Of a stretch of 64,000 nt of DNA, positions 19,471 through 39,973 are shown piece after piece. The stretch lies in IMG/VR virus record IMGVR_UViG_3300037116_000299, positions 150,301-214,300 of that record; one strand, given 5' to 3'. Each line of letters starts with the position of its first letter. The stretch's first letter is position 1. The translations under genes and the position numbers were made by a program. The notes under the pieces are model-generated. The model saw only the letters and a program-made list of their open reading frames with translations, was not told the origin of the DNA and did not search any database.

Positions 19471-19475
19471 ATTCC

Positions 19476-20402: not shown

Positions 20403-20404
20403 CC

Positions 20405-22377: not shown

Positions 22378-22389
22378 GAGGAGGTCCTT

Positions 22390-23070: not shown

Positions 23071-26000
23071 GTGCCCAATCCATTCATCGTATTCGATCTC
23101 GAGGCCAGCTCCTTCAACACGGGGCTGGCCAATTCGTTTCTGAATGGAGACGGCCGCGGCGCTGACTTGATTCAGGAGTTCGTCCGCACTAGTTCCGACC
23201 CTTCCCGTCTGCAACAGCATCCCCTCTTCCAAGCTCACCAGCGTTCCCAGATTCTGCAGGTCTACGCAACCGGCGGCGCCTTTCAAGGCGGCGACGAAGG
23301 ATGGGTACGTCCGTTCGACGAGATGCGCCGGTTCAACCGGCCGATCGGGAATTCACTCTACGATGAGAGCGACTTTGCCCTCCGTCATTCCCTGCTCTCG
23401 AAGGCACAGGGAGGCCGCAACTATGAAGCCCAGCGCGTCGAGCAACTGTACCAGGGAATCTCGGACTCGATCCGGTCCCATGGCAAGGCAGTCCTCGGTG
23501 GGCACAACATCGGGTCTTATGACTTGTGGAGGCTCGAGTACGCCACCTATCAGCACGACTCCCTGCGGAATCGCCGCGGGTGGCTGGCGGACCAGGTGCG
23601 CACGGGCCGTCTCATGTTGCGGGACAGCGACGCCGAACTGCTCGGAGCTGCCTCGGCGTTTGCCCGCCAGGATGCAGACTTTGCCGCCCATCACTTGAAG
23701 GGTGCGACCGACGTGGCTTCGGCCAAGTGGGTCTCCGGTCACAACCTGACCAACATCACCGAGGCAATGGGCTATCGCAACACCAATGCCCACAATGCCC
23801 TGGATGACACCCTCGGGAATGTGGCGTTCTTCGGGGACATCGATTCGGGGAAGGCCTTCACGCCGGAATCACTGCGTTCGATCTTCCCCCGCCAGGCTGC
23901 CGCTGCCACGCGCGAAGCCGCGCCGCTCCGGGCTACCGTGGCTGAAGCTGCAACGGAAGCGCGTTCTCTCTTCACCGGCGGAGAGAAGAAGTTCCTCATC
24001 GGCGCCGCCGTCGCCGCCGCCGCCGCCGCCGTAGGCTCTCTGATTGCGCACTCTACCCGCCGCGATCGCCAGACCCAAATCACAGGTCTTGGCGAGACCG
24101 GCATGGGCGCGCAGGGCCGCCACAGACTCACGGACTTCGGCTCTGGCTACCAGGGCCTCTCCACCTCCCCCAATCCCTTCCAGCTCGAGTCTGAGGCCGC
24201 CTACAACCCCCTGGTGCGCGCACTGGGTGTAGGCGTCACCGGCTCTGCGCTCTACGGCGCCCATCGCTACATGCTGGCGACGAGCCCGAACTATGCCAAG
24301 CGCCTCCACGGTGCTGCGCTCAAGTTCGAGCAGTATTCCCCCATGCACCTGGGGCGCACCTTCGCTGCCAGCGAACGGTTCTCGTCCTACCTGCCCAGCA
24401 AGCTGGTATTCACCCGCGGGATGCTGACCAATGACGACGGCACCCTCAATGAGGTGGGCCAGACCTTCGATCGTCAGTTCTCAGCAGCCGGACACAAGTT
24501 TGATTTCCTGAATGAGGTCACCGAAGACAATCCCCTGGTCTTCGAAGGCCGCCGCCGGGCGGGCTCCGGATCCCTGCAACTCCAGGGGCGCGGCATCGAC
24601 ATCGAGACCCGGTTCGTCCCCTCCGAGGGACGTCTGGCGGGAACCGCCGCGCGGCTTGACCAGGCGTTGGTCAACCATCCGATTCGCAGGTCGCAGGCTC
24701 AGAGTTCAGTCAAGCAGGCCTGGGGTGATTTCCAGGCAGTCCGCCGATCCCAGCGAATCTCGAATGCATCTCCCTGGTCTGAAGTCGCTAGTGCTGAAAA
24801 GCTGTATCGGCCTTTCTATACCCAGGGGCATGTCGCCGATCCTGCCGACGAGCTGTTCTCCCAGGCCCGCAATGCATGGACCCGTCTTCGGGTAGAGGGG
24901 CTCGAGGCGACCGAGCGTACCCAGAGACTCTTCGCGGAAGCAGGGTTCGGACTGAAGGCAGGTACCTGGAACAAAGCAGCTCATCTCCCCTTTGTCGGGG
25001 AAGGCGGCATGCTCAACCAGATGCTCACCAAGCGCGTCGCGCCTCTGGTGCTTGCAGCCACTGCGCTGGGCTGGCTGGACTATAAGCTGGGGCATCCAAG
25101 CAACAAGATCGTCGATCTTGGCCTGAAGGCCAATGTCCTGCGCGCCGACCTGACCGATATGGTCCCCGGCGCCCGCGGCGTCACTGACTTCTACGACAAG
25201 GTCACCCCGGGATCGCAGTACGGCCCGTTGGCGTTGCCCCTGGCCGGCGCTTTCTTTGGAGGTGTCTACCACTACGGCAAACTCCTCGGCGGCAAGTACG
25301 CCGATGAGGCAGCCAGGACCCTCGGGGCTCGTATCCTCCCTGAGATGAAGGGCCTGCGCAACTTCACCGCTAAGGGTGGCAAGTTGGTTTCCGTCGAAGG
25401 AGCTTCCGCTATCTGGAAGTCTCTCGGCGCGCCGGGCAAGGGCGCTGCCATCGGCCTGGCTGCCATGGCTCTGTTCGTGCCCGGCATGCTTGGGTCCCGT
25501 AAGAGCGGCGCCGATCTGCGCGACATCTACTCCGGCAGCGAACCGATTCCAATCAGGTCCGGCCGCTGGTGGGAAGTCGGCTCAACACCCTACGAAGGCG
25601 GACGCATCAAGGAGTGGCGTCCCCACTGGAGCGTGCTGCGCAAGAGTCATGCAGAAGACATCTCGCTCTACGGATCCGAGAAGGATAAGTGGAAGCACAA
25701 TCCCATCCTGCATCCGCTGAAGTATGCCCGCGATCCCTACTGGCTTGAGAAGCAGCATTACTACGATCGACCGTACCCGGTTGCGTCCCCGGCGTTCTCC
25801 AATGTTCCCTTGATCGGCCCGCTGCTCGCCGCGACCGTCGGCAAGTTGGTCAAACCGCCTGTGCGCATGCATGAAGAGAACTGGAATGGAGAGGATTACA
25901 CCCTCTACTCAACCCGTCTGGAACCGAAGGGCCCAGGCGCGGTCGCGCCGCCCCGTCCGGAAGACGAGTTCACCCTCAGACATGCCCTCAAGCAGGAAGT

Positions 26001-28101
26001 AGGTATCCTGGCCGAGTACACCGGACTCTACGGATTCATCGCCAGCAGCGCCTACCAGGCCATCTTCCCAGGTGTGAACCAGGGCAAGGACGTCTACTTC
26101 CAGGGCTCCCGTCAGATGGACAATTTCTCCCGCCGCTACTACGAGCGGGAGCTGGGCGCCGGCATCGCGCCGTCTCCCTCGATGAAGGAACACTTCGGAT
26201 ACACCGAGCCCTTCCGCCGATTTGTCCAGCGGGAAGACTTCTCTCCCCAGGCCAACCCACTGCGCAACCAGATGCCTGGCTGGCTGCCCGGAGCCGACTA
26301 CCTCACCAACTTCCAAATCGGCGATCCCTTCACCAAGGTCGACGAGGGCTATGCCCGCCTGCCTGGCGCCGGCTACGAGGCCCTGCATCCAGAGTTGAAG
26401 GGACTCAAGCCCGAAGACTACCCCGACATCAACAAGCTGGCCATCCTGGGTGACGTAGCCCCGTACTCGCGCGAGTACAACATCTTCCGTTCGAAGGTAG
26501 GCGCCGACTCCGCCGACAACACCGAGCTGCGCATCGAGTACGAGAAGATCCTCGACCGCGTCCGGCAGACCAGGGAGTCCGTCATCCGGATGGACGCTCG
26601 TCGCTTCACCGAGCCTGTCGCTGAGCTTGAAGGCACCGTCGAAACGGCGACGCCCGGCGGAGTCACCCTCAAGGAACACCCCGGACAACTCTTCCAGTTC
26701 TCGTCCGTGAGCATGAGTGCCGCCAGCATGTCGGCGAGCATTCTCGGCGAGCACAACAATCTGACCCGCGCGGAAGTTGCCGGACAGGTTGACGAGCGCC
26801 ATCAGAAACTGCAGGACTACCTGGCTGGGATGGTTGGATCCAAAGCCCACCTGACAGTCCCCGATGGAACACTCGGCCGGGCGGAGCGCGCACGAGCCGT
26901 CATCGAAGTCGATGGCAAGAACCTCAACCGGGAACTGATCGACCAGGGTTACGGCCAGTATCAAGAACGCCTGGGCGGAGCTGAAGCGCAGGAGATGTTC
27001 GGCGCCGCCGGCAAGACCATGGGCTCGATCGCTGAGGCCCTCGCCTTCCAGGGCGACTCCGGCCGGCTCAACCCGATGCGCTACATCCCCACACCAGGCC
27101 ACACCAAGGCCTGGCAGGAGCGCACGCCACTCGCCCAGTACATGACCAACGAGGTTGTTGGCACCCGCATGCGGCGGTGGGAACGGCCCATCCATGACTT
27201 CCTCATGCCTTACGCACGAGGCGCCTGGCAGCGGATGAGCGGTAAAGCTCTCATTCCTGAGGATGTACAGGTTCGGCGGGATCTGAACACCCTGGGCGAC
27301 ACCATGCAATATCTCCGCGGACTCAATGCGGAGACCTCGGGGACCTATACTAATAAGAAGCAGAGGACTTCTGTCGGGGCCAACCTGTTTGCCGCGTCGA
27401 CGTTTGTAGCTTCTACCCTTCCCGCCCGCGAATCCCATTACTTCCGCCAGTTCCTCAACGAGACGGATCCCGAGAAGCGGGCCTCGATTCTCGAAGTGGC
27501 TTCGACCGAGATGCAGCGCGCCCTTTCCGCGCAGTGGGTCGCTCAGGAAGCTCGCATTCAGGTAGCCAACGGCGAAGACCCTGGCCCGATCGGCGAAGGC
27601 GGCCGGCTCTACACCCAGGCCAACGTCGAGGACTACAAGAAAACCGACACCAGTCTGGACTACGGCAATTGGTTGCGATCCAAGGAGATCGCCGACTTCT
27701 TCTCCCGCACCGGGTTTGCTCTTCCCGAACAAGGATCAGCTGCATACGACGAAGCTTTGGATTATGAGGACGTCAAGCTGAAACTGATTCAACAGGAAGG
27801 GTACGACTCCCATGACTTCAACATCTTCGATGACCGGGCAGCCATGCTGTGGCGCAAGCCGTATGTGGATGGCGCTGTCCGCGAACTCACCAGTGGTGAC
27901 GATCGTTCCCCAGAACAGTTGCGGCGGGCGGTCGAACAGCTGATGACAGCCTCACACGACGCAAGATCGGATGTTCGAACTGCGGTACACGCAAGCCACA
28001 CGAATCGCGCGAGCATTCGAGTGGATGTATCTGTCGACGAGAGCGACGCACTGGTGAGAGACATTCGCCGCAACCCCGACAAGTATGCGCAGGAGACGTA
28101 A
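23071..28101 (+). CDS. tape-measure-position giant protein (1676 aa) with N-terminal DEDDh 3'-5' exonuclease domain
   Basis: ExoI FDLE (D9,E11), ExoII GHNIGSYD (D151), ExoIII HNALDD (H241,D246); several hydrophobic helices; degenerate SNase-like segment near 26620-26970. Confidence 0.7.
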   Translation: MPNPFIVFDLEASSFNTGLANSFLNGDGRGADLIQEFVRTSSDPSRLQQHPLFQAHQRSQILQVYATGGAFQGGDEGWVRPFDEMRRFNRPIGNSLYDESDFALRHSLLSKAQGGRNYEAQRVEQLYQGISDSIRSHGKAVLGGHNIGSYDLWRLEYATYQHDSLRNRRGWLADQVRTGRLMLRDSDAELLGAASAFARQDADFAAHHLKGATDVASAKWVSGHNLTNITEAMGYRNTNAHNALDDTLGNVAFFGDIDSGKAFTPESLRSIFPRQAAAATREAAPLRATVAEAATEARSLFTGGEKKFLIGAAVAAAAAAVGSLIAHSTRRDRQTQITGLGETGMGAQGRHRLTDFGSGYQGLSTSPNPFQLESEAAYNPLVRALGVGVTGSALYGAHRYMLATSPNYAKRLHGAALKFEQYSPMHLGRTFAASERFSSYLPSKLVFTRGMLTNDDGTLNEVGQTFDRQFSAAGHKFDFLNEVTEDNPLVFEGRRRAGSGSLQLQGRGIDIETRFVPSEGRLAGTAARLDQALVNHPIRRSQAQSSVKQAWGDFQAVRRSQRISNASPWSEVASAEKLYRPFYTQGHVADPADELFSQARNAWTRLRVEGLEATERTQRLFAEAGFGLKAGTWNKAAHLPFVGEGGMLNQMLTKRVAPLVLAATALGWLDYKLGHPSNKIVDLGLKANVLRADLTDMVPGARGVTDFYDKVTPGSQYGPLALPLAGAFFGGVYHYGKLLGGKYADEAARTLGARILPEMKGLRNFTAKGGKLVSVEGASAIWKSLGAPGKGAAIGLAAMALFVPGMLGSRKSGADLRDIYSGSEPIPIRSGRWWEVGSTPYEGGRIKEWRPHWSVLRKSHAEDISLYGSEKDKWKHNPILHPLKYARDPYWLEKQHYYDRPYPVASPAFSNVPLIGPLLAATVGKLVKPPVRMHEENWNGEDYTLYSTRLEPKGPGAVAPPRPEDEFTLRHALKQEVGILAEYTGLYGFIASSAYQAIFPGVNQGKDVYFQGSRQMDNFSRRYYERELGAGIAPSPSMKEHFGYTEPFRRFVQREDFSPQANPLRNQMPGWLPGADYLTNFQIGDPFTKVDEGYARLPGAGYEALHPELKGLKPEDYPDINKLAILGDVAPYSREYNIFRSKVGADSADNTELRIEYEKILDRVRQTRESVIRMDARRFTEPVAELEGTVETATPGGVTLKEHPGQLFQFSSVSMSAASMSASILGEHNNLTRAEVAGQVDERHQKLQDYLAGMVGSKAHLTVPDGTLGRAERARAVIEVDGKNLNRELIDQGYGQYQERLGGAEAQEMFGAAGKTMGSIAEALAFQGDSGRLNPMRYIPTPGHTKAWQERTPLAQYMTNEVVGTRMRRWERPIHDFLMPYARGAWQRMSGKALIPEDVQVRRDLNTLGDTMQYLRGLNAETSGTYTNKKQRTSVGANLFAASTFVASTLPARESHYFRQFLNETDPEKRASILEVASTEMQRALSAQWVAQEARIQVANGEDPGPIGEGGRLYTQANVEDYKKTDTSLDYGNWLRSKEIADFFSRTGFALPEQGSAAYDEALDYEDVKLKLIQQEGYDSHDFNIFDDRAAMLWRKPYVDGAVRELTSGDDRSPEQLRRAVEQLMTASHDARSDVRTAVHASHTNRASIRVDVSVDESDALVRDIRRNPDKYAQET

Positions 28102-29171
28102 TGCAACCGCACAGCATCACCCTTGACCCCGAGCTGCACAGCGTTGATATCCGCGAGATTGAACGTCGCCTGAAAGAAAGGGTGGCTGGTCAAGATCCGG
28201 CCATTTCACAGTTGGTGGGCTTGCTCGAAACCTACTTTGCCGGCTACAACGACCCTAATGCTCCTGTGGGCGTGGTGCTTGCCCTGGGCCCGTCCGGGAC
28301 CGGCAAGACCAGTCTGATCGAAGCTCTGTGCGAGATACTCTACGACAACCCCAAGGCGCATGTTCGGATGAACTGCGCGGACTTCAAGGAGTCCCAACAG
28401 ACCCAGCGGATTGTCGGAGCGCCTCCGGGCTACATCGGTTTCAAGGACAAGTCGATCGAGACGTATTTGACCCAGGAGAATCTGGACCGCCATCACACGG
28501 CGAAGATGAAGCTCAGCGTCGTCCTGCTGGACGAGATCGAGGAAGCTCATAGCGCCCTCTATGACTACCTGCTGGCCGTATTCAATGACGGCGAAGGCAT
28601 GGTCAGCGGCAAGCTGGTCAACTTCCGCAACACCCTGTTTGTCATGACCTCGAACCTGGGGACCTCCACGAAGTCCAGCCTGCTTGGCTTTACGGCCGAC
28701 CAGGTCGCCGCCCATAACCACCAGAACGAAGCATCGATCCGCAAGGCAGTGCAGGAGCATTTCAAGTTCAAGTTCCTGAACCGCATCGACGAAACCATGA
28801 TCTTCGAGGCGCTGTCCAAAGAGACCATCGACCTGATCTTCGACATGCAGGTGTGCCAGATCCGCCGCAGGCTTCTGATCTCGAAGCAACCCGGTCCGCA
28901 GTACGTGTTCAAGATCCAGGACGATGCCCGCCAGGAGCTGGTCCGCCGCGGCTTTGACATCAAGTTTGGAGCCCGTCCCCTGAAGCGTGTCCTCCGCCGG
29001 GTCATTACCGACAAGCTGGCGGCTCTGATGCGCAGCGGCCAGGTGGAACACGGCGACCTGGTGGTGATCGATTACACCGGCATTCGCTTCATCTACGAGA
29101 AATACAACGGTGACGAAATCGGCCAGCTCTCGGACCCGCAATGGGCCGAGTTCAGCAGGATCATCGACTAG
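28101..29171 (+). CDS. stand-alone ClpA/B/C D2-type AAA+ ATPase
   Basis: VAGQD, Walker A GPSGTGKT, pore loop GAPPGYIG, Walker B LLDEIE, sensor-1 TSN, Arg finger NRID, sensor-2 GARPL; no D1 or N-domain. Confidence 0.9.
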   Translation: MQPHSITLDPELHSVDIREIERRLKERVAGQDPAISQLVGLLETYFAGYNDPNAPVGVVLALGPSGTGKTSLIEALCEILYDNPKAHVRMNCADFKESQQTQRIVGAPPGYIGFKDKSIETYLTQENLDRHHTAKMKLSVVLLDEIEEAHSALYDYLLAVFNDGEGMVSGKLVNFRNTLFVMTSNLGTSTKSSLLGFTADQVAAHNHQNEASIRKAVQEHFKFKFLNRIDETMIFEALSKETIDLIFDMQVCQIRRRLLISKQPGPQYVFKIQDDARQELVRRGFDIKFGARPLKRVLRRVITDKLAALMRSGQVEHGDLVVIDYTGIRFIYEKYNGDEIGQLSDPQWAEFSRIID

Positions 29172-29329
29172 ACCTTTGATAGATGCGGCGGAACAGCGAT
29201 GCTGTTCTAGCCACCAAGGCTCCCACCGGGCGGACGAGTAACTCACCTGGACTTCCGCGATAGCACCCTGCCGTCCTCACCTGTGCTCCCCACCTCGCTC
29301 GGAAGCGTCCGCCCACCCCTCTCCCTCCC

Positions 29330-32300
29330 ATGCCAAATCCCCTCCCATCGATGACCCGAACCGCCCTCAACTCCCTCAATGAGGGTGTTGACGGCGTGCG
29401 TGCATGGGCGAATCTCAGCCTGCTGCACTCCAGGGTGGGTATGGGAGCGGGCATTGCCATGCTGGCAGCTCCGTTGTTCCTGAAGAATGACGAGCGCGGT
29501 TACTTCCAGACGGCTGCGATGACCACTCCCTTGATCGCCGCCGGCGCCATGGTAGCGCCGCGGCTGTTCCCGACGCTGCAGCGCGAAGGTAAACGCCTCA
29601 TCGACGTGGTCAAGCAGGTTCCTACCGACTACGGCTTTCAGAGCGGGGTCTACAACGCCGAGAGCGGCGCAATGAACCTATCCGAACTGCGCCAGGCCTT
29701 CGAAGGCGGACGCATCTCCTCCGCGGATTACAACCGAGGTTTGCTGCGCTATCACGGTGACATTGCCGCCAGCGTGATCAGTCCCGACGAGATCGACCGG
29801 CAGTTCCTGTCGGCATCCCGCACCTTCTCCGAACTGTACAAAGATCCCACCAAGCACCGCATGCTCGAGAACGCGCTGTACCGCGCGACGCTGAGCCAGG
29901 AAAGCGCCGGCGAGAAAGCTGCCTGGAACGACCTGACGGCGGTTGCACCAAAGATGTCGCTCAATGAGATCGACGACCTGTTCGACGCCTACTCCAAGAA
30001 CCCGGACTGGCTGAAACAGGTCAACTACCGAATGCAGGAAGCCCGCAAGGCAACTACATCCGGCGCCACCATTCCCTCAATCGACACCCTGGTCGATGCG
30101 AATGCCGAGTACGTGCACTCTTACAGCCTGGATACAGATCAGGGCATGGCGATGCTCAAGAACTCGCCGTTCCAGGATGAGATGAGCGAGATCGAGACCC
30201 TGCTCGGCACTCAGGGTGCGGGCTGGAAACGATCTGACTTCGAACTGCAGGTTCTGCCTGATCGCAACCAGGCAGTCAACCGCATCCAGGGCCTGATGGT
30301 TCGGGGCGAGCTGTCGATTCCTTTTGCTGATGCGGACGGCGGCGTGCGCCTGGGCAGCCGGTTCGACCGGCACGGGGCCTCCCGCTTCTTCATCACCCAC
30401 AACGACCGGCTCTCCTCCCAGGTCTATGCCCTGCGCGGGCTGCAGAGCGGCCCCGCCGCCATGCCGAGTGTGGCCGAGGAGCTGGCGCGCGCTCAGTTCA
30501 ACATTCAGGGCGATGCAGGTGCATTGCGCAACCAGAAGTTCTTCTTTGGCAAGCAGGGTGTCATGGGCAATCTGCCGAACTCATTTCCCACCGAACGAGG
30601 CGCAAAGGGATTTGCCGATCTTCGTCCGGAAGAGATGATGGCCGCGATCAAACATCAGACCGAGGGGCCGGATGGCCTGGTCCGGATGTCAGGCGGTACG
30701 GGTCTGGACATCTATGAAGATCGCTCACTGCGGTTGATCGAGCCCCAGGGCGTGCACTCGCGTGAGGCGGAGAGTCTGCGCGGCAAGGCCGTCAACAAGG
30801 GCGTCTCCGCCTGGGTAGCTCCCGGCCATGAAGGCTTCTCCGCCACCAACGCCGTGGATCTTCCTGAGTTTGCGATGCGGACCTACCAGGTGTCGGGCAG
30901 CCAGCATGCCTTCTTCAGCGAGATGCCGGAATGGAAGGCGATCGAGAACGACGTCAACCAGCAGTTCGGTTATATGGAAGCTGCCGGTTTCGGAGGCAGC
31001 TCCGCCCTGGAAGAAGAGGCACGACAACTGTCTGTCGATGTCGCCTTGAGCAAGATTGGCGCTCGGGAACGCATGATCACCTTCATGGCAGGAGATGCGG
31101 GTGTTGGTATGGAAGCAGCCGAGGCCATGTACACCAAGTTCCTGCCATTCCTGGCCAATCCCAAGAACTACGAGGCCATGCGATCGCTCTCCTATCTGGG
31201 AGATGGATCCAGAATCATGGGCAACAGCATCGGCGCTGGCTTCACCCAGACCCGCTCGGTGCGCCTGCACGAGAGCCTGCTCACCGAAGGCATGCTGAAC
31301 GGGGAGACCATTCCCGAAGGCACGCCACTGGGCTTCGAGTACGGCAACGCCGTGTTCCCCAACGGGGAGCGCAACAAGATCGTCTCGCACTCGAGCACCT
31401 TCAACGAAGACGGGTCAATGACCTTCCAGATCGAAGAGAACCTGGGCAGCCAAGGCCTGAAGACGCACGGCTACACCAAGCAGACGACTGTGCTCGGGCT
31501 CAACGACCTGACCCTGGACCGCGTGCGCCGCGGTACGAATGCGTGGCATCAGGCGACCGGCAGCGGTGGTGTGGTCGATGAGCGAGTAGCCGCCTTCACC
31601 CTGGAGGGTTCCAACTCGGCCAAGGCCAAGAACCCCCTCTCCATCATGGAGAACATGCTGGGCGCCACGCTGGGCGATGTCCAGCAGGCAAACGGTGAGC
31701 TGCCCGACTTTCTCAATGCCGGCCTCAAGCAGCTGTCGCCCTACGGCTATTCGTTTGAGAACGGCGGACTGCTCAGCGACTCGTCGAAGTTCCTGAGCAT
31801 GGAGCATGCTCCTGCGAACTACACCGCTGTGGCCGAGATTATGCACGGCTTGATGGAACAGACCGGCGCGGCCATCAAGGCCGAGCAAATCAAGCTGGAC
31901 GCATCCATGCGCGGCTACATTGACTGGTCCATGAAGAACTCCAACGGGTCTTATACCGACTACAAGACCCGCTTCGGCATGCCCGAATCTCTCAGCGTAT
32001 CCGATCACATGGCCCTGAACCACGCCGGTGAGGTTCGGATCACGCGCGACGCACTGCAGCAGTTGAACATTATGGGCTACCACGAGGTTGCCAAAGAGAT
32101 CAACGACCGCCTGCAGACCGACGGACTCCCGAGTATGACCCAGGACTTCCTCAAGCACATCGAGAAGGACGGCCAGGACTTCTCCGGTCAGTTTGGTGAT
32201 ACCACCGTTTCGCTCGCTGATGCAATGGGAGGTTCCGACCTGCGCCTGGGCACCGCCGCTGGGCGCTCGGGTACGATCTTCGACCCAAAGAATCCGCTTG

Positions 32301-34279: not shown

Positions 34280-34282
34280 ACC

Positions 34283-37200
34283 ATGAGTGTTACCTTCTCC
34301 ACCAGCAACTCGGGCCCTTCGTCTGCCGGCTACTTCCGGATCGGCTTTGTCACGCTGCAGATCCCGCCTCAGAACATCGTGACCTCGCGCGTCGTCAACA
34401 ACGACAAGCTGGCCACTCTGCGCGGCATGAACGAGATGTTCCGCAAGACCGGTCAGGCTCGCTGGGACGTAACCGTGAGCTGGGCCGCCATGATGGGCGG
34501 CGCCACACCCGAAGCCAAGTACCAGCAGTGGAATGATCTGCAGAACGTCGCCGCCATGTTCAAGGCAGCTCCCTTTGTCGAAGTCGAGTCACCTCACCTG
34601 CGCCAGGTCCTGGCCCCTCACGATCCGCTGATGGCTTATCCCCACCGGCTGGGGATGGCGTTGCGGCAGCTACGCGTTGATTCCCATCCCGATATCGTGG
34701 ACACCCTTCTGGTCACGTTGACGATGACCTACTTCAACTTCGGTCCCTACTCTGTGGCCTTCGACTATGTGGGCGACGAAGGACAGCCAGTCAGCGCCGA
34801 TCAATGCACCAAGTTCAAGAACTACATCGCCATGTGGCGCGCGAACAATATGGACCACGTCTCCGCGCGGGACGGCGACCCGATCGCACCGCTGTGGATG
34901 GCACAGGATCCAGGCGAGATGGCCCTGAAGTACCGGATCTACAACCCGGTTCCAACCGGTCAACTGCCGGACTTTGGAACCATGGTCATGCCTGGCGGCG
35001 CCCAGGTGGGCACGACAGTGCTGCCCAGCACCTACACTCCAGCGTCAGCGACATCTGCCGCGGCCGGCAAAGCGAGCAAGGGAACTCTGCCTCCGGATAT
35101 CGAAGCTCTGATTCGGAAGACGGCACTTACGGTCAAAGGGTACTGTGATCCGGCTATTGCCTGTGCAGTCTGTCTCACCGAAAGCGCTGGAAACCCAACT
35201 GCTCACAATGCAGGATCGACAGCACAGGGTCTCTTTCAGTTGCTGGCAGGCACGCGCCAGTCCCTCAACGTGGCGGACGGCTTCAATGCACAGCAGAGCG
35301 CCCAAGGTGGCTGCCAGTACCTGGCCGATCTGTTCAAGAAACTGGGCACCTGGGAGCTTGCCGTTGCTGGTTTCAACCAGGGATCCGGCACCATCGTTGC
35401 TTATCGGGACGGCAAGGCCTTGACCGACAAGAGCAACGGGCACGTGATCAATCCGAACAAGCTGGTGACCGGTGGAATTCCTCCGGATCCTGCTGTGCAG
35501 CGGTACGTTTCAACCATCCTGCGCAATGCACAGATGAAGTTCGGATTCACCGGGCAGACAGCACCTCAGCCAGGCTCCCAGCGGCCACAGACCGCACAAG
35601 TGGCACCGGCCGCTGCGACCAACAGCGCCACATCGCCCGCCACTTCCACCAGCAATCCAATGACAGCGACGGACTCCGCGACCGAACAGGCGTTCCAGGC
35701 CCAGGCTACCGAGATGGCGGCCGACGGTTGGAGTCTTGATCATCGGTCGGACACCGCGGGCGTCGGGATCTGCTTCTTCTACAAGGAAGCCGAAGTGAGG
35801 ATGGCTCCGCTCGATTCGTCTACGGCGGATGTCACCGGCGGCATCTGGCCCACCCAGTTCTCGGTTCTGCTGGTGAACAATCTGGCGCAGATCCCTCTGT
35901 CCGGTTATCAGTATCCGACCTATCAGCATCTTGGCCCCTGCAGTTCGCTGGTGCAGATCTCGTTCATGTCCAAGGGCGAGCGCGCCGACGAAACCCAGGA
36001 ACCTGTGCACGAAGGCCTCAGGTCGCTATCCTCCATGGCTCACTTCATGGAACAACAGCACCTGCGTCTGCGCACGCAACTGCGCACGCCCAATTCCCTG
36101 CATCGGATGCAGGCAGTCTACGTTGAGAACCAGGTCCTGAACATGCTCGGCATCTACGGCCTCATGCTTGACCAGGTCACTACCGAGACATTGCCCGAGT
36201 CCTCGGACCTGGTCACGGCGCAGCTGACGGCCAGCCAGTACGAGAACCGCTTCGAAGAGATCGAGCCCTACAAGTTGAACGGCATCTCCCAGGCCTACAA
36301 CCAGGGGTTGAAGGACCTGGTGCTGACCGACAATACCATTCAGCAGGCACCTTCCGATGTCCAGGGACCGTTGAAGCCCATCTTGAACTACCGCACCCAG
36401 GCAGATAACGCAGATGAAAATGCGATGATCGCGCGCCTGATGGAAGTCGCGGCTCAGCCGTCGTCGACTCTGTTCACGTACATGGCAGGTGCACCCACTT
36501 TCACCATCAGCCAGGTCGACGCCGCCCAGATCACCTACCAGACGGGAGTGGACTGGTCGAAGTATCCGGTCGCACTCGCCCGGGTGAAGCAACTCCAGCA
36601 GACTGGCGATGCTCAGACCTGGACGATGGCCGACTACCTGATGATCAAGAGCGTGGCCTGGAAGGTCTACAAGCCGGTTAATCTGGGCGGCAGTATTCAA
36701 CACGTCGACTCAACCTTCCAGGGCAACACCCGCCGGACGATGGTCCAGGATGCGTATCAGCGGCTGTTCGCGTACTTTGCCGCGAGCGACACCGGACTGC
36801 GCACCGCTCTCAACCAGGTGATGAACAGCCCAGCCCTGGCCGCCAAGGTCAAGGGCGCAGTGCCCTCCGGGGACCCGTCGCTGGCGTCACCAGGATCCAA
36901 CGACCACGGCGCCTACCGGGATATGGGTTTGAACACCATCCTGTTGAACGGCGAAGACTTCAACCCCGGCATGTACTTTGTCAACAACAACGAACAGTAC
37001 AAGACACTTGCGAAAGGCGCCCTGCTGGATGTGATGAGGTCGACGGCATCGGCGGCGGCGCAGACCAACAGCAATGACAACAGCCAGCAGCTGCCGAATT
37101 CAGTGGCCCCAATCTCCTCGACGACATCTCTGACTCCGACAAACCTCCCCGTAGATCAGGCAGGACAGATCAACCTGCCGGCAGGCCTCAAGTCGATCCC

Positions 37201-39973
37201 CGGCAATGCGGATACGGTCATGCGGATGTGCAACATCCCCGGCTACAACATGGCCGAGGCGTTCCCGACCTTCAAGCTGATGTTCCTGGAGGACGAGAAC
37301 AACAACGTCTATTACGCATTCGACGACTTCTTCAGCTATGCCTCGGTGCTCGACTTCGAGATGCAGCGGCCGTGGAATCGCCCGGCTACACTGCAGATCA
37401 AGATCACCAACCTGGCCTACCTGCTCAACCACAAGATCTACGATGCTTCGACCGCTGGCAAGTGGGCGTCCTACCGCGACCGCTTTGCCACCGAGGTCTC
37501 CGGATCCGCAGCAGTCGCTGTTCCTAGCGACACCAACACCAAGATCACTGCCGGAAAGGAAGGCATCGGAGGCACGCCCTATCAGCTGATGGGCCCGGAC
37601 ATGACCGAAGGCCCGCGCGGCGGCAACATGAAGAACCGTCGCATTCCGCTGCAGTATTTCCCACTGCAGACCGGCACCAAGATCCAACTGCGGGTTGGCT
37701 ATTCGAACAACCCCGACAAGCTGTTCCCCATCTTCTGCGGGACTGTGACGGAGATGGAAGGCAACGAGATCATCACCATCACAGCGCAGAGTTTCATGCT
37801 GGAGTTGACGGAACCGCTGAGCGACAAGGCTCAGACGGACTCCTGGATTCACATCGGCTCGCTGCTGGAGAGTGGCCTCAGCTGCCTAACCCTTGGCCGG
37901 ATTGGAACGATCGGCCGCGGCGCCGCCTATGGAGGCCTGACTCTCTTCGGCGACTCCGGCGATACCGGCACCGTGATCTCGAAGATGCTCAAGTCTTCGG
38001 GCGCGAAACACTTCGGGCACTGGCAGATCGATGCCACCGGCAACCACATGTTGAAGGGGTTTGGCTGGAAGGAACTGTCCGGCGAAGTGGCCGGCACCGC
38101 GGCGGGTTGGGTTGGTCATGGAGACGTGGGCATCGCATTGCAGTCGAACTACGATCGGACGGATGAGAACGTCATGATCAACTCGGCCGGCAACTTCGAT
38201 GGCACCTCGACGGACGCCGCCAACTCCCACCAGTATCTGGATCAGGGCAGCCCGTTGCGGCCGTTCTCCTACTACGTGGACTCAGCGACGCAGCTGACCC
38301 TCATGGAACTGATTCAGGACGTGGCCCGGCGTTATCCGGAGTACCTGCTGCTCGAGAAGTGGTACGGCTATCCGTACAGCTGCGATGCGACCCTGGTCTT
38401 CGGTCATCCCTTCGATTGGTACTTCGCTCGGCCGTCCCTGCTGGGCGACCAGGAGAAACAGCGCGCGGCCGATCAGAACATCGACGCTTACAAGCTGTGG
38501 TGGGACGCGCAGGGCAAGAAGATGTTCACAGATCTGTTGGGCGGTGCCGGTCACCTCAGTCTTCTTGGCATTCCGCTGGGCAGTTCTGTTGGCTGGCTGG
38601 AATCTCACGTGATGACTGGACTGGTAAACCAGGCGGCGCAGAGCCCCGCCGGTCTGCAGGCAGCTCTGCAGTCAGATGCCATCGTTGGAATGACACCGGG
38701 CGTTGTAGGAAAGATTCCAGGACTGAGGGACTTCCAGCGCGCCCTGCAGCAGGACGCAGCCGCTATCCTGAAGTCCTATTACGCCAGCCAGATGTCTGGT
38801 TCGGATCTGGCTTCTTCAGATCGCATGAAGCCCGTGCGCCGCTACCACTTCATCGACGACCAGTCGATCGTCCACAACGGCATGTCGCTCAACGACAAGA
38901 TCTACAACTGCGTGAAGATTGGGGATGGTGAGAAGGGCGGCAAGAAGTATGCCGTGAGCGCCAATCCCAACATCATGCCCAGCTACCTGCGGGCGCTCGA
39001 TGTGACGGACCGCATCAACGATCCGAAGCAGAACGTCATCGACCAGGCCCTGATCGGCACCAACCAGCAGATGATCCAGGTCTACGGCCAGAGCTTCCTG
39101 CGTGAAGAGGTCGGCAAGATGTACAAGGGCGAGATCATCCTGCGCGGGATCCCCGAGATCGAGCCGATGGACATCCTGATGATCATGGACCCGGCGACAG
39201 GCATGCAGGGACCTGTAGAAGTCGACACCGTGACCCAGATCATGAACCTTGAGATGGGTTTCATCACCATCATCAAGCCGCGGGCTGTCGTCTGCATCAA
39301 CGAAGCATCAAGCGCCGGTTTCCTGCGCATGTTGGGCATGATGGCCGGAGCCGCACTGCCGGAACTCCGCCGTCTGACCAGCCTGTCCAGGTATGCAGTG
39401 ACCGGTGCTGGCACCAAGGCAGTAACTGCTGCAGTTGTCGGCCGCGTTGGCTGGGCAGGTCTGAAGTGGGCGGGTGAAAAGGCGGCATCGGGAGTAGTCT
39501 CGAATGCCCTCAAAGCTACCAGTGAAGGACTGCTGGACGTCGCTACCGCTCCGGGCGCCATAACGGGCTTTACGACGGCAGTTGGGACCGCCTCTGAGGC
39601 CGCCGGCACCGCCGCCACCGGCGCGCTCGCAGCTGAAGGTGCAATGGCTGGAACGGTTGCCTTCCTGGCGAGCCCTCCCGGCTGGGCGGTACTCGCACTG
39701 TGCGCTGTGGCTGCGATCGGTGGATCCATCTGGATGGTCAACAAGGGCACTGAGAACAGCAATGCCCTGGTGATCTCTCCCTGCCTGAAGCTCGGCCGGC
39801 CCTGGGTCGGCGGCGTCCAAGGCTGGGCCATCGAGGACATGGTGGGCATCATGAACAACGAGGCTATGCAGTTCATGGCAGACGAGATCTTCCCCCTTTA
39901 CGACCTGTGGCTCGAAGCAGGCGGGTATTCCAACCCGATTCCGGCGGCATTTCAACCGGCTTTGGCCCAGTAG
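34283..39973 (+). CDS. baseplate hub / tail-associated protein with lytic transglycosylase domain (1896 aa)
   Basis: SLT motifs CLTESAGN (E300), AQGLFQL, GGCQYL, AVAGFNQG at about 35090-35520; C-terminal hub-like region (IQLRVGYSNNP...IFCGTVTE..., YKGEIILRG.P...P.D); hydrophobic C-terminal segment. Confidence 0.7.
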   Translation: MSVTFSTSNSGPSSAGYFRIGFVTLQIPPQNIVTSRVVNNDKLATLRGMNEMFRKTGQARWDVTVSWAAMMGGATPEAKYQQWNDLQNVAAMFKAAPFVEVESPHLRQVLAPHDPLMAYPHRLGMALRQLRVDSHPDIVDTLLVTLTMTYFNFGPYSVAFDYVGDEGQPVSADQCTKFKNYIAMWRANNMDHVSARDGDPIAPLWMAQDPGEMALKYRIYNPVPTGQLPDFGTMVMPGGAQVGTTVLPSTYTPASATSAAAGKASKGTLPPDIEALIRKTALTVKGYCDPAIACAVCLTESAGNPTAHNAGSTAQGLFQLLAGTRQSLNVADGFNAQQSAQGGCQYLADLFKKLGTWELAVAGFNQGSGTIVAYRDGKALTDKSNGHVINPNKLVTGGIPPDPAVQRYVSTILRNAQMKFGFTGQTAPQPGSQRPQTAQVAPAAATNSATSPATSTSNPMTATDSATEQAFQAQATEMAADGWSLDHRSDTAGVGICFFYKEAEVRMAPLDSSTADVTGGIWPTQFSVLLVNNLAQIPLSGYQYPTYQHLGPCSSLVQISFMSKGERADETQEPVHEGLRSLSSMAHFMEQQHLRLRTQLRTPNSLHRMQAVYVENQVLNMLGIYGLMLDQVTTETLPESSDLVTAQLTASQYENRFEEIEPYKLNGISQAYNQGLKDLVLTDNTIQQAPSDVQGPLKPILNYRTQADNADENAMIARLMEVAAQPSSTLFTYMAGAPTFTISQVDAAQITYQTGVDWSKYPVALARVKQLQQTGDAQTWTMADYLMIKSVAWKVYKPVNLGGSIQHVDSTFQGNTRRTMVQDAYQRLFAYFAASDTGLRTALNQVMNSPALAAKVKGAVPSGDPSLASPGSNDHGAYRDMGLNTILLNGEDFNPGMYFVNNNEQYKTLAKGALLDVMRSTASAAAQTNSNDNSQQLPNSVAPISSTTSLTPTNLPVDQAGQINLPAGLKSIPGNADTVMRMCNIPGYNMAEAFPTFKLMFLEDENNNVYYAFDDFFSYASVLDFEMQRPWNRPATLQIKITNLAYLLNHKIYDASTAGKWASYRDRFATEVSGSAAVAVPSDTNTKITAGKEGIGGTPYQLMGPDMTEGPRGGNMKNRRIPLQYFPLQTGTKIQLRVGYSNNPDKLFPIFCGTVTEMEGNEIITITAQSFMLELTEPLSDKAQTDSWIHIGSLLESGLSCLTLGRIGTIGRGAAYGGLTLFGDSGDTGTVISKMLKSSGAKHFGHWQIDATGNHMLKGFGWKELSGEVAGTAAGWVGHGDVGIALQSNYDRTDENVMINSAGNFDGTSTDAANSHQYLDQGSPLRPFSYYVDSATQLTLMELIQDVARRYPEYLLLEKWYGYPYSCDATLVFGHPFDWYFARPSLLGDQEKQRAADQNIDAYKLWWDAQGKKMFTDLLGGAGHLSLLGIPLGSSVGWLESHVMTGLVNQAAQSPAGLQAALQSDAIVGMTPGVVGKIPGLRDFQRALQQDAAAILKSYYASQMSGSDLASSDRMKPVRRYHFIDDQSIVHNGMSLNDKIYNCVKIGDGEKGGKKYAVSANPNIMPSYLRALDVTDRINDPKQNVIDQALIGTNQQMIQVYGQSFLREEVGKMYKGEIILRGIPEIEPMDILMIMDPATGMQGPVEVDTVTQIMNLEMGFITIIKPRAVVCINEASSAGFLRMLGMMAGAALPELRRLTSLSRYAVTGAGTKAVTAAVVGRVGWAGLKWAGEKAASGVVSNALKATSEGLLDVATAPGAITGFTTAVGTASEAAGTAATGALAAEGAMAGTVAFLASPPGWAVLALCAVAAIGGSIWMVNKGTENSNALVISPCLKLGRPWVGGVQGWAIEDMVGIMNNEAMQFMADEIFPLYDLWLEAGGYSNPIPAAFQPALAQ

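What the first reader, a model, noticed from the sequence alone, without database searches (positions are those of the whole stretch)
23071..39973. Candidate injected takeover cassette: exonuclease-tape measure, Clp ATPase, RNA polymerase and transglycosylase hub in one coupled run
Seen: four tightly linked genes (overlapping stop/start at 28101, 3-bp gap at 34280-34282, one 158-bp gap) spanning about 17 kb where myophages usually have a plain tape measure and hub. Each of the three giant proteins pairs an enzyme-like domain with Ala/Gly-rich hydrophobic helices (FLIGAAVAAAAAAVGSLI; VLGIGMAAAAAGGLLLGSL; WAVLALCAVAAIGGSIWMV). Inference: they could form an ejected trans-envelope conduit that opens peptidoglycan and delivers a polymerase and nuclease to the cytoplasm, with the AAA+ motor threading or remodelling them. 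I know of no described system with this combination.
Basis: inference. Interest (0 to 1): 0.78.

Follow-up and report, generated by a model that had tools for sequence, protein, structure and literature searches.

The report
RNA polymerase inside a phage tail module
A 214-kb contractile-tailed phage, probably of Acidobacteria, encodes a complete single-chain RNA polymerase, a nuclease-carrying giant protein and a cell-wall-cutting hub where a plain tape measure would normally sit. This suggests its tail injects enzymes as well as DNA.

Summary

- **gpC (1649 aa)** is a single-subunit two-barrel RNA polymerase. The AlphaFold model has pLDDT 89. The best PDB matches are RNAP largest subunits, QDE-1 and the P23-45/P74-26 phage RNAPs. 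The ADxDxD triad is invariant in 52 relatives.
- **gpA** carries an RNase T-like DEDDh domain (profile E 4e-5). Its core is compact and globular, so it is not a ruler. It is homologous to the virion protein gp145 of Bacillus phage 0305phi8-36.
- **gpD** is an SLT-bearing baseplate hub, homologous to 0305phi8-36 gp147.
- **gpB** is a ClpC/ClpB NBD2-type AAA+ protein.

The order gpA-gpC-gpD is kept in 10 of 10 related loci. The isolated jumbo myophages ME3 and 0305phi8-36 also have three giant genes at this position. The AAA+ gene is present in only 3 of 9 loci, and the DEDDh domain in only some family members, so neither is a core part.

The most likely function is tail-delivered cargo: an injected RNAP for first transcription, a nuclease carrier and a wall-cutting hub. 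The closest precedents are the tape-measure-fused virion RNAP of P23-45 and "polyvalent proteins". I rate it a new variant of a known kind. Virion location and enzyme activity are untested.

The parts
21934..23067 (+). Two small ORFs (147 aa and 225 aa) in the position of tail assembly chaperones, directly upstream of gpA
   Evidence: Conserved in L003, L004 and L006. There is a weak BLASTP hit of the 225-aa protein to the 0305phi8-36 tail chaperonin gp144 (E 0.01). The assignment rests on position only.
23071..28101 (+). gpA, 1676 aa: a giant protein made of a DEDDh domain, a hydrophobic helix and a conserved globular core. It is a homologue of the 0305phi8-36 virion protein gp145.
   Evidence: (BLASTP E 2.5e-24, 3e-21 and 3e-14, collinear).
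23071..23940 (+). gpA aa 1-290: RNase T/DnaQ-like DEDDh 3'-5' exonuclease domain
   Evidence: In a 27-sequence alignment, D9 is invariant and E11, N146, D151, H241, A243 and D246 are at least 90% conserved, matching Exo I, II and III. The profile hits RNase T: 2f96 at E 4.3e-5, 2is3 at 8.6e-4, 3nh0 at 1.2e-3, with all three motifs in register. There is no Pfam hit.
23992..24048 (+). gpA aa 308-326: Ala-rich hydrophobic helix FLIGAAVAAAAAAVGSLIA
   Evidence: Kyte-Doolittle score 2.23. It is present in all long-form family members and is followed by a highly conserved RxDRQTQITGL...DFGSG motif.
26611..27012 (+). gpA aa 1181-1314: staphylococcal-nuclease-like OB-fold domain, probably not catalytic in this phage
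   Evidence: All 50 top Foldseek PDB hits are SNase (probability about 1, E 0.05-0.2). VIA gives Z 7.5-8.1 to Tudor-SN and SNase. A family-wide Asp (100 of 101 sequences) is Ser1219 here, also in two independent contigs.
28101..29171 (+). gpB, 356 aa: single-ring Clp/Hsp100 AAA+ module (NBD2 type plus D2-small domain), an optional accessory gene
   Evidence: Pfam AAA_2 at 1e-28 and ClpB_D2-small at 2e-15. ClpB/ClpC NBD2 in PDB at E 5e-55. It has a GYIG pore loop, and LLGF at the position of the ClpC1 LGF loop. Orthologues occur only in L004 and L025.
29172..29329 (.). 158-nt gap before gpC, pyrimidine-rich, with no Shine-Dalgarno-like run
   Evidence: No promoter or terminator consensus was found.
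29330..34279 (+). gpC, 1649 aa: single-subunit two-barrel RNA polymerase in the tape-measure position
30947..33589 (+). gpC aa 540-1420: polymerase core containing both double-psi beta-barrels
   Evidence: AF2 pLDDT 89.4, pTM 0.87. All 50 top Foldseek PDB hits are RNAP largest subunits. VIA gives Pol I Z 10.8, vaccinia Rpo147 10.6, P74-26 gp62 9.6, QDE-1 9.5 and P23-45 gp96 7.6.
31460..31480 (+). gpC K711...K717 (GLKTHGYTK): the two basic residues of the beta-like barrel
   Evidence: Both are at least 90% conserved in 52 sequences, within the consensus GxKxDxxGxKG.
32846..32860 (+). gpC D1173-T-D1175-G-D1177: metal-binding DxDxD triad of the beta'-like barrel
   Evidence: Invariant in 52 sequences, as are P1139 of the RHP motif and K1312. 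Isolated DPBB domains align to model residues 542-646 at Z 8.
33836..33901 (+). gpC aa 1503-1524: Ala/Gly-rich hydrophobic helix, followed by a conserved 125-aa C-terminal tail
   Evidence: It is conserved in L003, L004 and L006.
34283..39973 (+). gpD, 1896 aa: enlarged baseplate hub carrying a peptidoglycan hydrolase
   Evidence: BLASTP to 0305phi8-36 gp147 at E 1e-11 and 9e-6, collinear, plus tblastn. gp147 is the published T4 gp27/P2 gpD homologue (PMC2147016).
35135..35404 (+). gpD aa 285-374: SLT lytic transglycosylase domain
   Evidence: Pfam PF01464 at 3e-13. Relatives replace it with Glucosaminidase, or carry Peptidase_M23 or a faint Peptidase_M15_3 hit.
37220..39652 (+). gpD aa 980-1790: hub-like region
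   Evidence: PHROG 20474 at 1.6e-34 over aa 1510-1693. Protein-language-model features point to Mu gpP/gp44 hub families at 0.90-0.92, which is a lead only.
39662..39739 (+). gpD aa 1794-1819: hydrophobic helix near the C-terminus
   Evidence: It is conserved in L003, L004 and L006.
16731..20402 (+). Context: tail sheath (16731-18578) and two paralogous tube-like proteins (18688-19386 and 19476-20402)
   Evidence: PHROG 16991 at 2e-36. The paralogy shows in cross-hits.
41022..42593 (+). Context: gp25/W-like (41022-41381) and J-like baseplate wedge (41382-42593)
   Evidence: PHROG 975 and PHROG 6 at 8e-26. Baseplate_J is annotated in relatives.

Best explanation
This is the inner-tail and hub block of a temperate-looking jumbo myophage of the 0305phi8-36/ME3 lineage, probably infecting Acidobacteriaceae. 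Its three giant proteins are virion cargo.

**Shown**
- gpD is the baseplate hub and carries a lytic transglycosylase.
- gpC is a complete single-subunit two-barrel RNA polymerase with an intact catalytic centre. It lies where relatives place their tape measure.
- gpA is a conserved globular protein whose family repeatedly picks up nuclease domains: DEDDh here; Vsr-like/MTES_1575 or SNase elsewhere.
- gpB is a Clp-type unfoldase module present in only a minority of relatives.

**Inferred**
- gpA and gpC are loaded into the tail, or the head-tail channel, during assembly and are expelled on sheath contraction after the hub has cut the peptidoglycan.
- Their Ala/Gly-rich helices insert into the inner membrane.
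- gpC then transcribes the first genes of the entering DNA independently of the host polymerase, as in P23-45, N4 and crAss-like phages.
- The gpA nuclease acts on host or competing nucleic acids.
- gpB is an accessory, not a core part. It is either an assembly or processing chaperone for the giant proteins, or a partner for host ClpP.
For: **gpC as an RNAP**
- Invariant DxDxD and RHP motifs and near-invariant GxKxDxxGxKG in 52 relatives.
- Confident model. All 50 top Foldseek PDB hits are RNAP largest subunits.
- VIA matches single-chain two-barrel RNAPs across both barrels, model residues 83-881.
- The family has 105 representative clusters, nearly all 1500-1800 aa.

**Position and synteny**
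- The order sheath, tube, chaperone-like ORFs, gpA, slot, gpC, gpD, baseplate is kept in 10 of 10 loci.
- ME3 and 0305phi8-36 also have three giant genes between the chaperonins and the baseplate genes.

**Virion location by homology**
- gpA is related to gp145, and gpD to gp147.
- gp145 and gp146 are annotated as detected in virions by mass spectrometry.

**Nuclease theme**
- DEDDh motifs and RNase T profile hits.
- Alternative nuclease domains in the same family.
- The BtI1 hub homologue carries an SNase domain (PMC2147016).

**Other**
- P23-45 gp96 is a precedent for a tail-borne two-barrel RNAP that transcribes pre-early genes (PMC10770324).
- No classical tape-measure Pfam family occurs elsewhere in the genome.
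- No second RNAP was detected.
Against: - There are no virion data for this phage or for any member of the gpC family.
- The 0305phi8-36 protein in the same position (gp146) shows no detectable homology to gpC and has no DxDxD motif.
- An 880-residue compact polymerase core cannot pass a tail tube while folded, so unfolding and refolding has to be assumed.
- No repeated promoter-like motif was found, and no non-virion RNAP that would complete a P23-45-like cascade.
- The record is classed as a provirus, and a relative lies in a 3.26-Mb bacterial contig. An injected RNAP would be unusual for a temperate phage.
- No metallopeptidase (HExxH) is present for self-processing.
- The link to ME3 gp036 is structural only. 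hhalign gives no support.
Confidence: 0.6

Rival explanations
1. gpC is a non-virion RNA polymerase whose gene merely sits inside the tail operon. It is made late and used in the cytoplasm, for example for late genes or for the next round after packaging, and is not injected. The real length ruler is then something else.
For: The polymerase core is compact and well folded, unlike a ruler. gpC has no detectable homology to the 0305phi8-36 TMP candidate gp146. 0305phi8-36 keeps its YonO-like RNAP (orf99) outside the structural arm (PMC2147016).
Against: The gene sits between gpA and the hub in 10 of 10 loci and is tightly coupled to the hub gene by a 3-nt gap. It has a conserved C-terminal hydrophobic helix and tail, plus hydrophobic N-terminal segments that a soluble RNAP does not need. 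A polymerase expressed only with late structural genes could not start the infection. A BFVD structural relative is annotated 'Minor tail protein'.
Confidence: 0.15
2. One reading: the AAA+ ATPase gpB is the dedicated motor that unfolds and threads gpA, gpC and gpD into the tail, or remodels them, so all four genes form one obligatory machine.
For: gpB orthologues (32-44% identity) recur in exactly the same slot in three divergent loci. In L025 one sits next to a papain-like Peptidase_C1 gene. gpB has an intact Walker A, Walker B and GYIG pore loop. Its start overlaps the stop of gpA.
Against: The gene is absent from 6 of 9 related loci that keep the three giant genes, and from ME3 and 0305phi8-36. 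It therefore cannot be essential for loading or ejection. No ATP is available in the virion for an ejection role.
Confidence: 0.15
3. gpB is a host-takeover accessory. It is a ClpC-like unfoldase that docks onto host ClpP through its LGF loop and redirects proteolysis, with no functional link to the giant proteins.
For: The loop region aligns best with ClpC-type proteins, with LGF on LGF, while ClpB has a gap there. The phage encodes no ClpP. The slot between gpA and gpC is variable, which is typical of moron-like accessory genes.
Against: The L004 orthologue has no [LIVM]G[FL] motif. The complex prediction with E. coli ClpP gave no answer. The repeated linkage to the same slot, once with a peptidase gene, hints at a link with the giant proteins.
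Confidence: 0.2
4. The giant proteins are head-internal ejection proteins, like the T7 gp14-16 core, N4 vRNAP or the phiKZ/SPN3US ejection bolus, rather than tail-lumen residents. The outcome (injection) is the same, but the packaging site and assembly pathway differ.
For: The folded cores are large: gpA at pTM 0.86 and gpC at 0.87. That fits a capsid better than a 4-nm tube. N4 and crAss-like virion RNAPs are carried in the particle, not as tape measures (PMC10770324, discussion).
Against: The genes lie between the tail chaperone-like ORFs and the hub, not in the head module. No other tape-measure candidate exists in the genome. P23-45 shows that a two-barrel RNAP can be part of a tape measure.
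Confidence: 0.2
5. The block belongs to a tailocin or extracellular contractile injection system that delivers effectors, not to a phage.
For: It has a contractile sheath, a hub with enzymes and an AAA+ gene, as in eCIS loci.
Against: The same 214-kb record encodes a major head protein, portal, large terminase, primase, RecD2-like helicase and ribonucleotide reductase. CheckV rates it 99% complete.
Confidence: 0.02

Closest known systems
Thermus phage P23-45 gp96: tape-measure-fused virion two-barrel RNA polymerase (PMC10770324; PDB 8h2m, 8h2n)
   Same: It is a single-chain two-barrel RNAP with a DxDxD triad, encoded in the tape-measure position of the tail module. It is combined with a membrane-type hydrophobic segment, and is proposed (for gp96, shown) to transcribe the first genes on entry. 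gpC shares the fold (Z 7.4-7.6 across both barrels).
   Different: P23-45 is a siphovirus, and its RNAP is the N-terminal quarter of a 5002-aa ruler that also has a metallopeptidase. gpC is a separate 1649-aa protein in a contractile-tailed jumbo phage, with no HExxH and no recognisable ruler part. Its polymerase lies in the middle, flanked by two other giant proteins. gpC is no closer to gp96 than to QDE-1 or P74-26 gp62. No partner non-virion RNAP was found.
Bacillus phage 0305phi8-36 tail block gp143-gp147 (NC_009760; PMC2147016)
   Same: The gene order is the same: two chaperonin-like genes, a giant virion protein, a giant middle protein, then an enlarged T4 gp27-like hub with an N-terminal transglycosylase, followed by V-like and J-like genes. 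gpA is homologous to gp145 and gpD to gp147. A relative's hub carries a nuclease domain.
   Different: The middle protein gp146 (2537 aa, assigned as tape measure from tail length) shows no similarity to gpC and has no DxDxD. The RNAP of 0305phi8-36 (orf99, YonO/RdRP-like) is encoded in the non-structural arm. There is no AAA+ gene and no DEDDh domain.
Acinetobacter phage vB_AbaM_ME3 gp035-gp037 (NC_041884; genome announcement PMC5000817)
   Same: It is an isolated jumbo myophage with the same layout and sizes: gp035 (1263 aa, gpA-like, tblastn E 9e-30), gp036 (1603 aa, unannotated, DHDQD at 1217) and gp037 (hub). A predicted ME3 structure of 802 aa, half of 1603, matches the gpC model at E 4e-8.
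   Different: Sequence similarity between gp036 and gpC is not detectable. ME3 has no AAA+ gene and no DEDDh extension. gp036 has never been described as a polymerase in the papers I could search.
Polyvalent proteins of phages and conjugative elements (Iyer et al. 2017, PMC5512222)
   Same: These are giant multidomain proteins proposed to enter the host with the DNA. They combine peptidoglycan hydrolases, nucleases and nucleic-acid polymerases or primases, with frequent domain swapping. The AlphaFold DB relative of gpA is auto-named 'Large polyvalent protein associated domain-containing protein'.
   Different: Here the activities are spread over three adjacent proteins in the tail module rather than fused in one chain. 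No processing metallopeptidase is present. No Pfam LPD domain was detected in gpA.
Virion RNAPs of crAss-like phages (gp66 of phi14:2) and of N4
   Same: They are large virion-packaged polymerases injected to transcribe early genes. The crAss enzyme is also a two-barrel RNAP within a much larger protein.
   Different: Those are podovirus-like particles. N4 vRNAP is T7-like, not two-barrel. Neither gene is located between the tail chaperones and a contractile-tail hub. Neither appeared among the top structural matches. Only weak rows for uncultured crAss-like phage proteins were seen in BFVD.

Membership tests
Two-barrel (double-psi beta-barrel) RNA polymerase superfamily (gpC) | Two DPBB domains forming one catalytic core | tested here: met
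   In the AF2 model (pLDDT 89.4), isolated DPBB domains align to model residues 542-646 at Z 8.0-8.2. Single-chain two-barrel RNAPs (P74-26 gp62, QDE-1, RDR2, P23-45 gp96) align across model residues 83-881. All 50 top Foldseek PDB hits are RNAP largest subunits.
Two-barrel (double-psi beta-barrel) RNA polymerase superfamily (gpC) | Metal-binding DxDxD triad in the beta'-like barrel | tested here: met
   D1173, D1175 and D1177 are invariant in 52 sequences that are only 18-46% identical to gpC. The triad is also present in five further loci.
Two-barrel (double-psi beta-barrel) RNA polymerase superfamily (gpC) | Two conserved basic residues in the beta-like barrel | tested here: met
   K711 and K717 are at least 90% conserved, within the consensus GxKxDxxGxKG.
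Two-barrel (double-psi beta-barrel) RNA polymerase superfamily (gpC) | Template-dependent RNA synthesis | not testable with these tools
   This needs a biochemical assay of the recombinant core.
Tape-measure-fused virion RNAP of the P23-45 type (gpC) | Polymerase is part of the tail-length ruler polypeptide | tested here: inconclusive
   gpC is in the ruler position, and no other tape-measure family is present in the genome. However, no ruler-like part is recognisable, and there is no homology to the 0305phi8-36 TMP candidate.
Tape-measure-fused virion RNAP of the P23-45 type (gpC) | Metallopeptidase and membrane segments in the same protein | tested here: not met
   A membrane-type helix is present at 1503-1524, but there is no HExxH or HxxEH motif.
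Tape-measure-fused virion RNAP of the P23-45 type (gpC) | Presence in the virion | not testable with these tools
   The only evidence is indirect: the neighbouring family (gp145) and the positional counterpart (gp146) are virion proteins in 0305phi8-36.
DEDDh (RNase T / DnaQ-like) exonucleases (gpA aa 1-290) | Exo I (DxE), Exo II (NxxxD) and Exo III (Hx4D) catalytic residues in order | tested here: met
   D9 is invariant. E11, N146, D151, H241 and D246 are at least 90% conserved in 27 sequences.
DEDDh (RNase T / DnaQ-like) exonucleases (gpA aa 1-290) | Significant sequence similarity to known members | tested here: met
   The family profile hits PDB RNase T at E 4.3e-5, 8.6e-4 and 1.2e-3, with the three motifs collinear. 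Against this, Pfam PF00929 is not hit by any of the 27 members, and single-sequence searches fail.
DEDDh (RNase T / DnaQ-like) exonucleases (gpA aa 1-290) | RNase H-like fold | not tested
   gpA 477-1676 is predicted as a compact multidomain globule (pTM 0.86). It has no TMP Pfam or PHROG hit. Its 0305phi8-36 homologue gp145 is distinct from that phage's TMP candidate.
Staphylococcal nuclease (SNase/thermonuclease) fold (gpA aa 1181-1314) | OB-fold of SNase | tested here: met
   All 50 top Foldseek hits are SNase, with TM by target 0.50-0.56. VIA gives Z 7.5-8.1. AFDB TNase-like clusters also match. The E-values are weak (0.05-0.2).
Staphylococcal nuclease (SNase/thermonuclease) fold (gpA aa 1181-1314) | Catalytic and Ca-binding residues | tested here: inconclusive
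   There is no PF00565 hit. By eye the canonical Asp/Glu/Arg positions are not kept. The family's own near-invariant Asp is Ser in this phage.
Clp/Hsp100 AAA+ unfoldases (gpB) | AAA_2 module with D2-small domain, Walker A/B and pore loop | tested here: met
   Pfam scores are 100.7 and 57.4 bits, above the cut-offs. The match to ClpB NBD2 is E 5e-55. GPSGTGKT, LLDEIE and GYIG are visible in the sequence.
Clp/Hsp100 AAA+ unfoldases (gpB) | ClpP docking through an [LIV]G[FL] loop | tested here: inconclusive
   LLGF aligns with the LGF of ClpC-type chains. The complex prediction gave no answer, and the L004 orthologue lacks the motif.
Baseplate hub (T4 gp27 / P2 gpD / Mu gp44) (gpD) | Homology to a recognised hub protein, and position before the V/W/J-like genes | tested here: met
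   BLASTP to 0305phi8-36 gp147 gives E 1e-11 and 9e-6, collinear. gp147 is the published gp27 homologue (PMC2147016). gp25-like and J-like genes follow. No Pfam hub family is hit directly. ESM features point to Mu gpP/gp44 families, which is a lead only.
SLT lytic transglycosylases (gpD aa 285-374) | Pfam SLT above the gathering score | tested here: met
   49.8 bits against a cut-off of 21.3. A TES motif at aa 299-301 lies inside the matched stretch.

The most novel reading that the evidence does not exclude
A whole, largely unannotated lineage of contractile-tailed jumbo phages uses the tail as a protein injector. The lineage includes the Acidobacteria phages found here and the isolate ME3, and is related to 0305phi8-36. 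In this reading a single-subunit two-barrel RNA polymerase has replaced, or become, the tape measure. It travels with a conserved cargo protein that carries interchangeable nuclease heads. In some members a dedicated Clp-type unfoldase, sometimes with a papain-like peptidase, loads or processes these giants. That would be the first virion RNAP of this kind in a myovirus, and in a probably temperate phage.
Probability: 0.3. Interest if true: 0.8.

Novelty: new variant of a known kind. Interest (0 to 1): 0.62.

Why it matters
Virion-delivered RNA polymerases let a phage start its programme without the host enzyme. Known examples are few: N4, phiKZ-like, crAss-like and P23-45.

This work shows a populated but unannotated family, about 100 clusters at 50% identity, of two-barrel polymerases fixed in the tail module of jumbo myophages. 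It includes a probable member in a cultured Acinetobacter phage, so the idea can be tested directly at the bench.

It also shows that the neighbouring giant protein is a scaffold that swaps nuclease heads and that the hub swaps wall hydrolases. This makes the block a compact example of modular injected weaponry. It gives a functional reading for three of the largest 'hypothetical' genes in this phage lineage.

Tried and rejected
**Searches that found nothing**
- Pfam and PHROG gave nothing for gpA and gpC.
- tblastn of gpC against 50,697 phage records found no match.
- The gpC profile found nothing in PDB sequences.
- The gpA N-terminus taken alone found no homologues, because full-length relatives were excluded by the length filter. 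They were recovered later through the whole-protein search.

**A claim I corrected**
- I first noted that the DEDDh extension was unique to this phage. That was wrong: about 27 family members have it.

**Looking for a second RNAP or a promoter**
- A second RNAP was sought with Pfam Rpb2_6, RdRP, the gpC profile and DxDxD scans. Nothing was found. The DxDxD-bearing 708-aa and 747-aa proteins are the terminase and the portal.
- Counting k-mers in intergenic DNA gave no convincing promoter motif. The sigma-70 and terminator scans were at or below shuffle expectation.

**Profile and complex tests**
- hhalign of the gpC family against ME3 gp036 and against 0305phi8-36 gp146 gave no support.
- The gpB plus ClpP complex prediction gave no answer, so it counts neither for nor against.

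**Other**
- There is no HExxH peptidase motif in any of the four proteins.
- The eCIS/tailocin reading was rejected because head, portal, terminase and replication genes are in the same record.
I dropped it and did not resend it.

Full report
**Observation.** There is a 1-nt stop/start overlap, a 158-nt gap and a 3-nt gap. The ORF upstream ends 3 nt before gpA. Those of gpC and gpD recur at the same place in relatives.

**Context.** The window is the last 64 kb of a 214.3-kb single-contig virus record. IMG/VR classes it as a provirus, and CheckV rates it 99% complete.
- The rest of the record encodes primase, RecD2-like helicase, class II ribonucleotide reductase, large terminase and portal.
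- The window holds a major head protein, tail sheath, two paralogous tube-like proteins, two chaperone-position ORFs, the four genes in question, and gp25-like and J-like baseplate genes.
- It is therefore a jumbo myophage, and the block lies where a tape measure and hub belong.
- A 44%-identical gpC relative lies near the end of a 3.26-Mb contig of an Acidobacteriaceae MAG. Another relative is flanked by TonB-dependent receptor genes. Together these suggest an acidobacterial host and a temperate lifestyle.

**gpC is an RNA polymerase.** Sequence libraries give nothing.
- An exhaustive profile search finds 105 representative clusters, nearly all 1500-1800 aa, with the conserved core at the same place.
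- In 52 sequences that are only 18-46% identical to gpC, the invariant residues include D1173, D1175, D1177 (consensus ADxDxD), P1139 (RHPxS) and K1312. K711 and K717 (GxKxDxxGxKG) are at least 90% conserved. These are the signatures of the beta'-like and beta-like double-psi barrels.
- The AlphaFold model of aa 540-1420 is confident: pLDDT 89.4, pTM 0.87.
- All 50 top Foldseek PDB hits are RNAP largest subunits, starting with the phage AR9 non-virion RNAP.
- An independent aligner ranks Pol I, vaccinia and Pol II largest subunits at Z 10-10.8 over the second half of the model. Over both barrels it ranks the single-chain two-barrel enzymes: P74-26 gp62 at 9.6, QDE-1 at 9.5, RDR2 at 9.4 and P23-45 gp96 at 7.6.
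- Among predicted viral structures, the best matches (E 4e-9 to 4e-6) are unannotated giant proteins of Microcystis phage MaMV-DC and Acinetobacter phage ME3, and a siphovirus 'Minor tail protein'.
- Outside the core, gpC has hydrophobic N-terminal segments, a conserved Ala/Gly-rich helix (1503-1524) and a conserved C-terminal tail.
- No paralogue or other RNAP was found in the genome.

**gpA is a nuclease carrier, not a ruler.**
- Its family has more than 120 clusters, many on 200-230-kb contigs.
- Short forms (about 1300 aa) lack the first 365 residues.
- Long forms (about 1630-1700 aa, about 27 found) share them.
- In the long forms the DEDDh residues are conserved. The profile hits RNase T structures at E 4.3e-5, with Exo I, II and III in register. 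Pfam is silent.
- Other family members replace the N-terminal half with Vsr-like (PF04480) plus MTES_1575 endonuclease domains, or add an SNase domain.
- The core (aa 477-1676) is predicted as a compact globule, pLDDT 89 and pTM 0.86.
- The only recognisable part of the core is an SNase-like OB fold at aa 1181-1314. A family-wide Asp (100 of 101 sequences) is Ser there in this phage, also in two independent contigs.
- The core is homologous to gp145 of Bacillus phage 0305phi8-36 and to ME3 gp035. gp145 is annotated as detected in virions by mass spectrometry.

**gpD is the hub.**
- The SLT domain is clear.
- The remainder is collinear with 0305phi8-36 gp147. That protein is the published enlarged T4 gp27/P2 gpD homologue with an N-terminal transglycosylase (PMC2147016).
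- Relatives exchange SLT for Glucosaminidase, or carry Peptidase_M23 or a faint Peptidase_M15_3 hit.

**gpB is a Clp-type module.**
- It is an NBD2-type AAA+ with a D2-small domain and a GYIG pore loop.
- An LLGF sequence aligns with the LGF ClpP-docking loop of ClpC-type proteins. ClpB has a gap there.
- The phage has no ClpP.
- A complex prediction with E. coli ClpP gave no answer.

**Synteny.**
- The order gpA, slot, gpC, gpD is kept in all ten loci examined: the window, L003, L004, L006/7, L018, L019, L020 (partial), L023, L024 and L025. Every middle protein matches the gpC profile at E 1e-201 or better and keeps DxDxD.
- The slot between gpA and gpC varies. It is empty in two loci. It holds 189-425-aa unknown ORFs in four. 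It holds orthologous AAA+ genes in three, once with a papain-like peptidase.
- Isolated phages show three giant genes at the same position: 0305phi8-36 (gp145, gp146, gp147) and ME3 (gp035, gp036, gp037).
- ME3 gp036 (1603 aa) has DHDQD at 1217. It is very probably the ME3 protein that matches the gpC model structurally. Sequence-level homology is not detectable.
- 0305phi8-36 gp146, assigned as tape measure from tail length, has no DxDxD and no similarity to gpC. That phage keeps its RNAP elsewhere (PMC2147016, PMC7824862).

**Mechanism.**
- Shown: the identities above, the intact catalytic motifs, the conserved order and the modular swapping of enzyme heads.
- Inferred: gpA and gpC are virion cargo expelled through the contracted tail after the hub's hydrolase opens the wall. 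Their hydrophobic helices anchor them in the inner membrane. gpC transcribes the first genes of the incoming DNA. The gpA nuclease attacks host or rival nucleic acid.
- This follows the experimentally supported P23-45 model (PMC10770324) and the polyvalent-protein concept (PMC5512222).
- By my own rough estimate, a few copies of each protein would fit by volume in a tail lumen several hundred nm long, but only in an extended state. An unfolding and refolding step must therefore be assumed.
- gpB cannot be essential to this, because most relatives lack it.

**Weak points.**
- There are no virion data for any gpC-family member.
- No promoter motif was found.
- No second RNAP was found.
- The phage has a probably temperate lifestyle.
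- The N-terminal DEDDh fold, the gpC termini and gpD were not modelled.

**Novelty.**
- The general idea is known: injected enzymes, a virion RNAP, even an RNAP in a tape measure.
- What I could not find in the searchable literature is a two-barrel RNAP fixed in the tape-measure slot of contractile-tailed jumbo phages, flanked by a nuclease-swapping cargo protein and a hydrolase-swapping hub.
- I rate it a new variant of a known kind. A cultured phage, ME3, is available for direct tests.

Noticed in passing
window 26725-26727 (gpA Ser1219): Within the SNase-like domain, one column is Asp in 100 of 101 family members and Ser only in this phage. The same Ser is present in two independent near-identical contigs (99.99% and 98.6% identical), so it is not a sequencing error. 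The neighbouring near-invariant Arg (93 of 101) is Gln here.
   Followed up: partly
L003 20719-25031; L021 19000-22694: In two close relatives, one inside a 3.26-Mb Acidobacteriaceae MAG contig, the hub gene is followed directly by bacterial genes on the opposite strand instead of baseplate genes. In L003 these are TonB-dependent receptor and NikR-like genes. Either the prophage junction lies right after the hub gene, or these are truncated prophages. In L021 the three giant genes are split into several ORFs, through frameshifts or long-read errors.
   Followed up: partly
L025 14397-16601: In a distant relative, the slot between the gpA-like and gpC-like genes holds an orthologue of the AAA+ gene, then a 74-aa ORF and a papain-like Peptidase_C1 gene. 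This unfoldase plus protease pairing might process the giant proteins.
   Followed up: no
window 18688-21922: There are two paralogous tube-like proteins (232 aa and 308 aa, cross-hits at E 1e-12 to 1e-14 through their relatives). They are followed by a 505-aa protein with a CarboxypepD_reg Ig-like domain and a weak Phage_tube_C hit. PHROG labels the tube-like pair 'major head protein', which looks like a mis-annotation carried over from 0305phi8-36/ME3 records.
   Followed up: partly
window 12567-13640 (- strand): A family-2 glycosyltransferase with a TPR motif is encoded on the opposite strand, in the middle of the structural module.
   Followed up: no
window 4440-5282 and 10810-12570: Structural-module proteins carry bacterial Ig-like domains (Big_5; He_PIG at the C-terminus of a 586-aa protein). 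They are probably decoration or fibre proteins.
   Followed up: no
window 29172-29329: The only sizeable gap in the block is pyrimidine-rich (ccctctccctccc directly before the ATG) and lacks any purine-rich ribosome-binding run. The other three starts are translationally coupled. gpC may have its own start signal or an internal promoter.
   Followed up: no
genome G000:C1:108219-110375 (- strand; outside the window): A 718-aa protein matches PHROG 1735, a family of unknown function, at E 2e-262 end to end. This is unusually strong conservation for an uncharacterised phage protein.
   Followed up: no
BFVD hit A0A172Q0S6 (Acinetobacter phage ME3, 798 aa): A second, smaller ME3 protein also matches the gpC polymerase model (E 2e-3, probability 1.0, 530 columns). 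It could be a non-virion RNAP of that phage. No counterpart was detected in the present genome.
   Followed up: no
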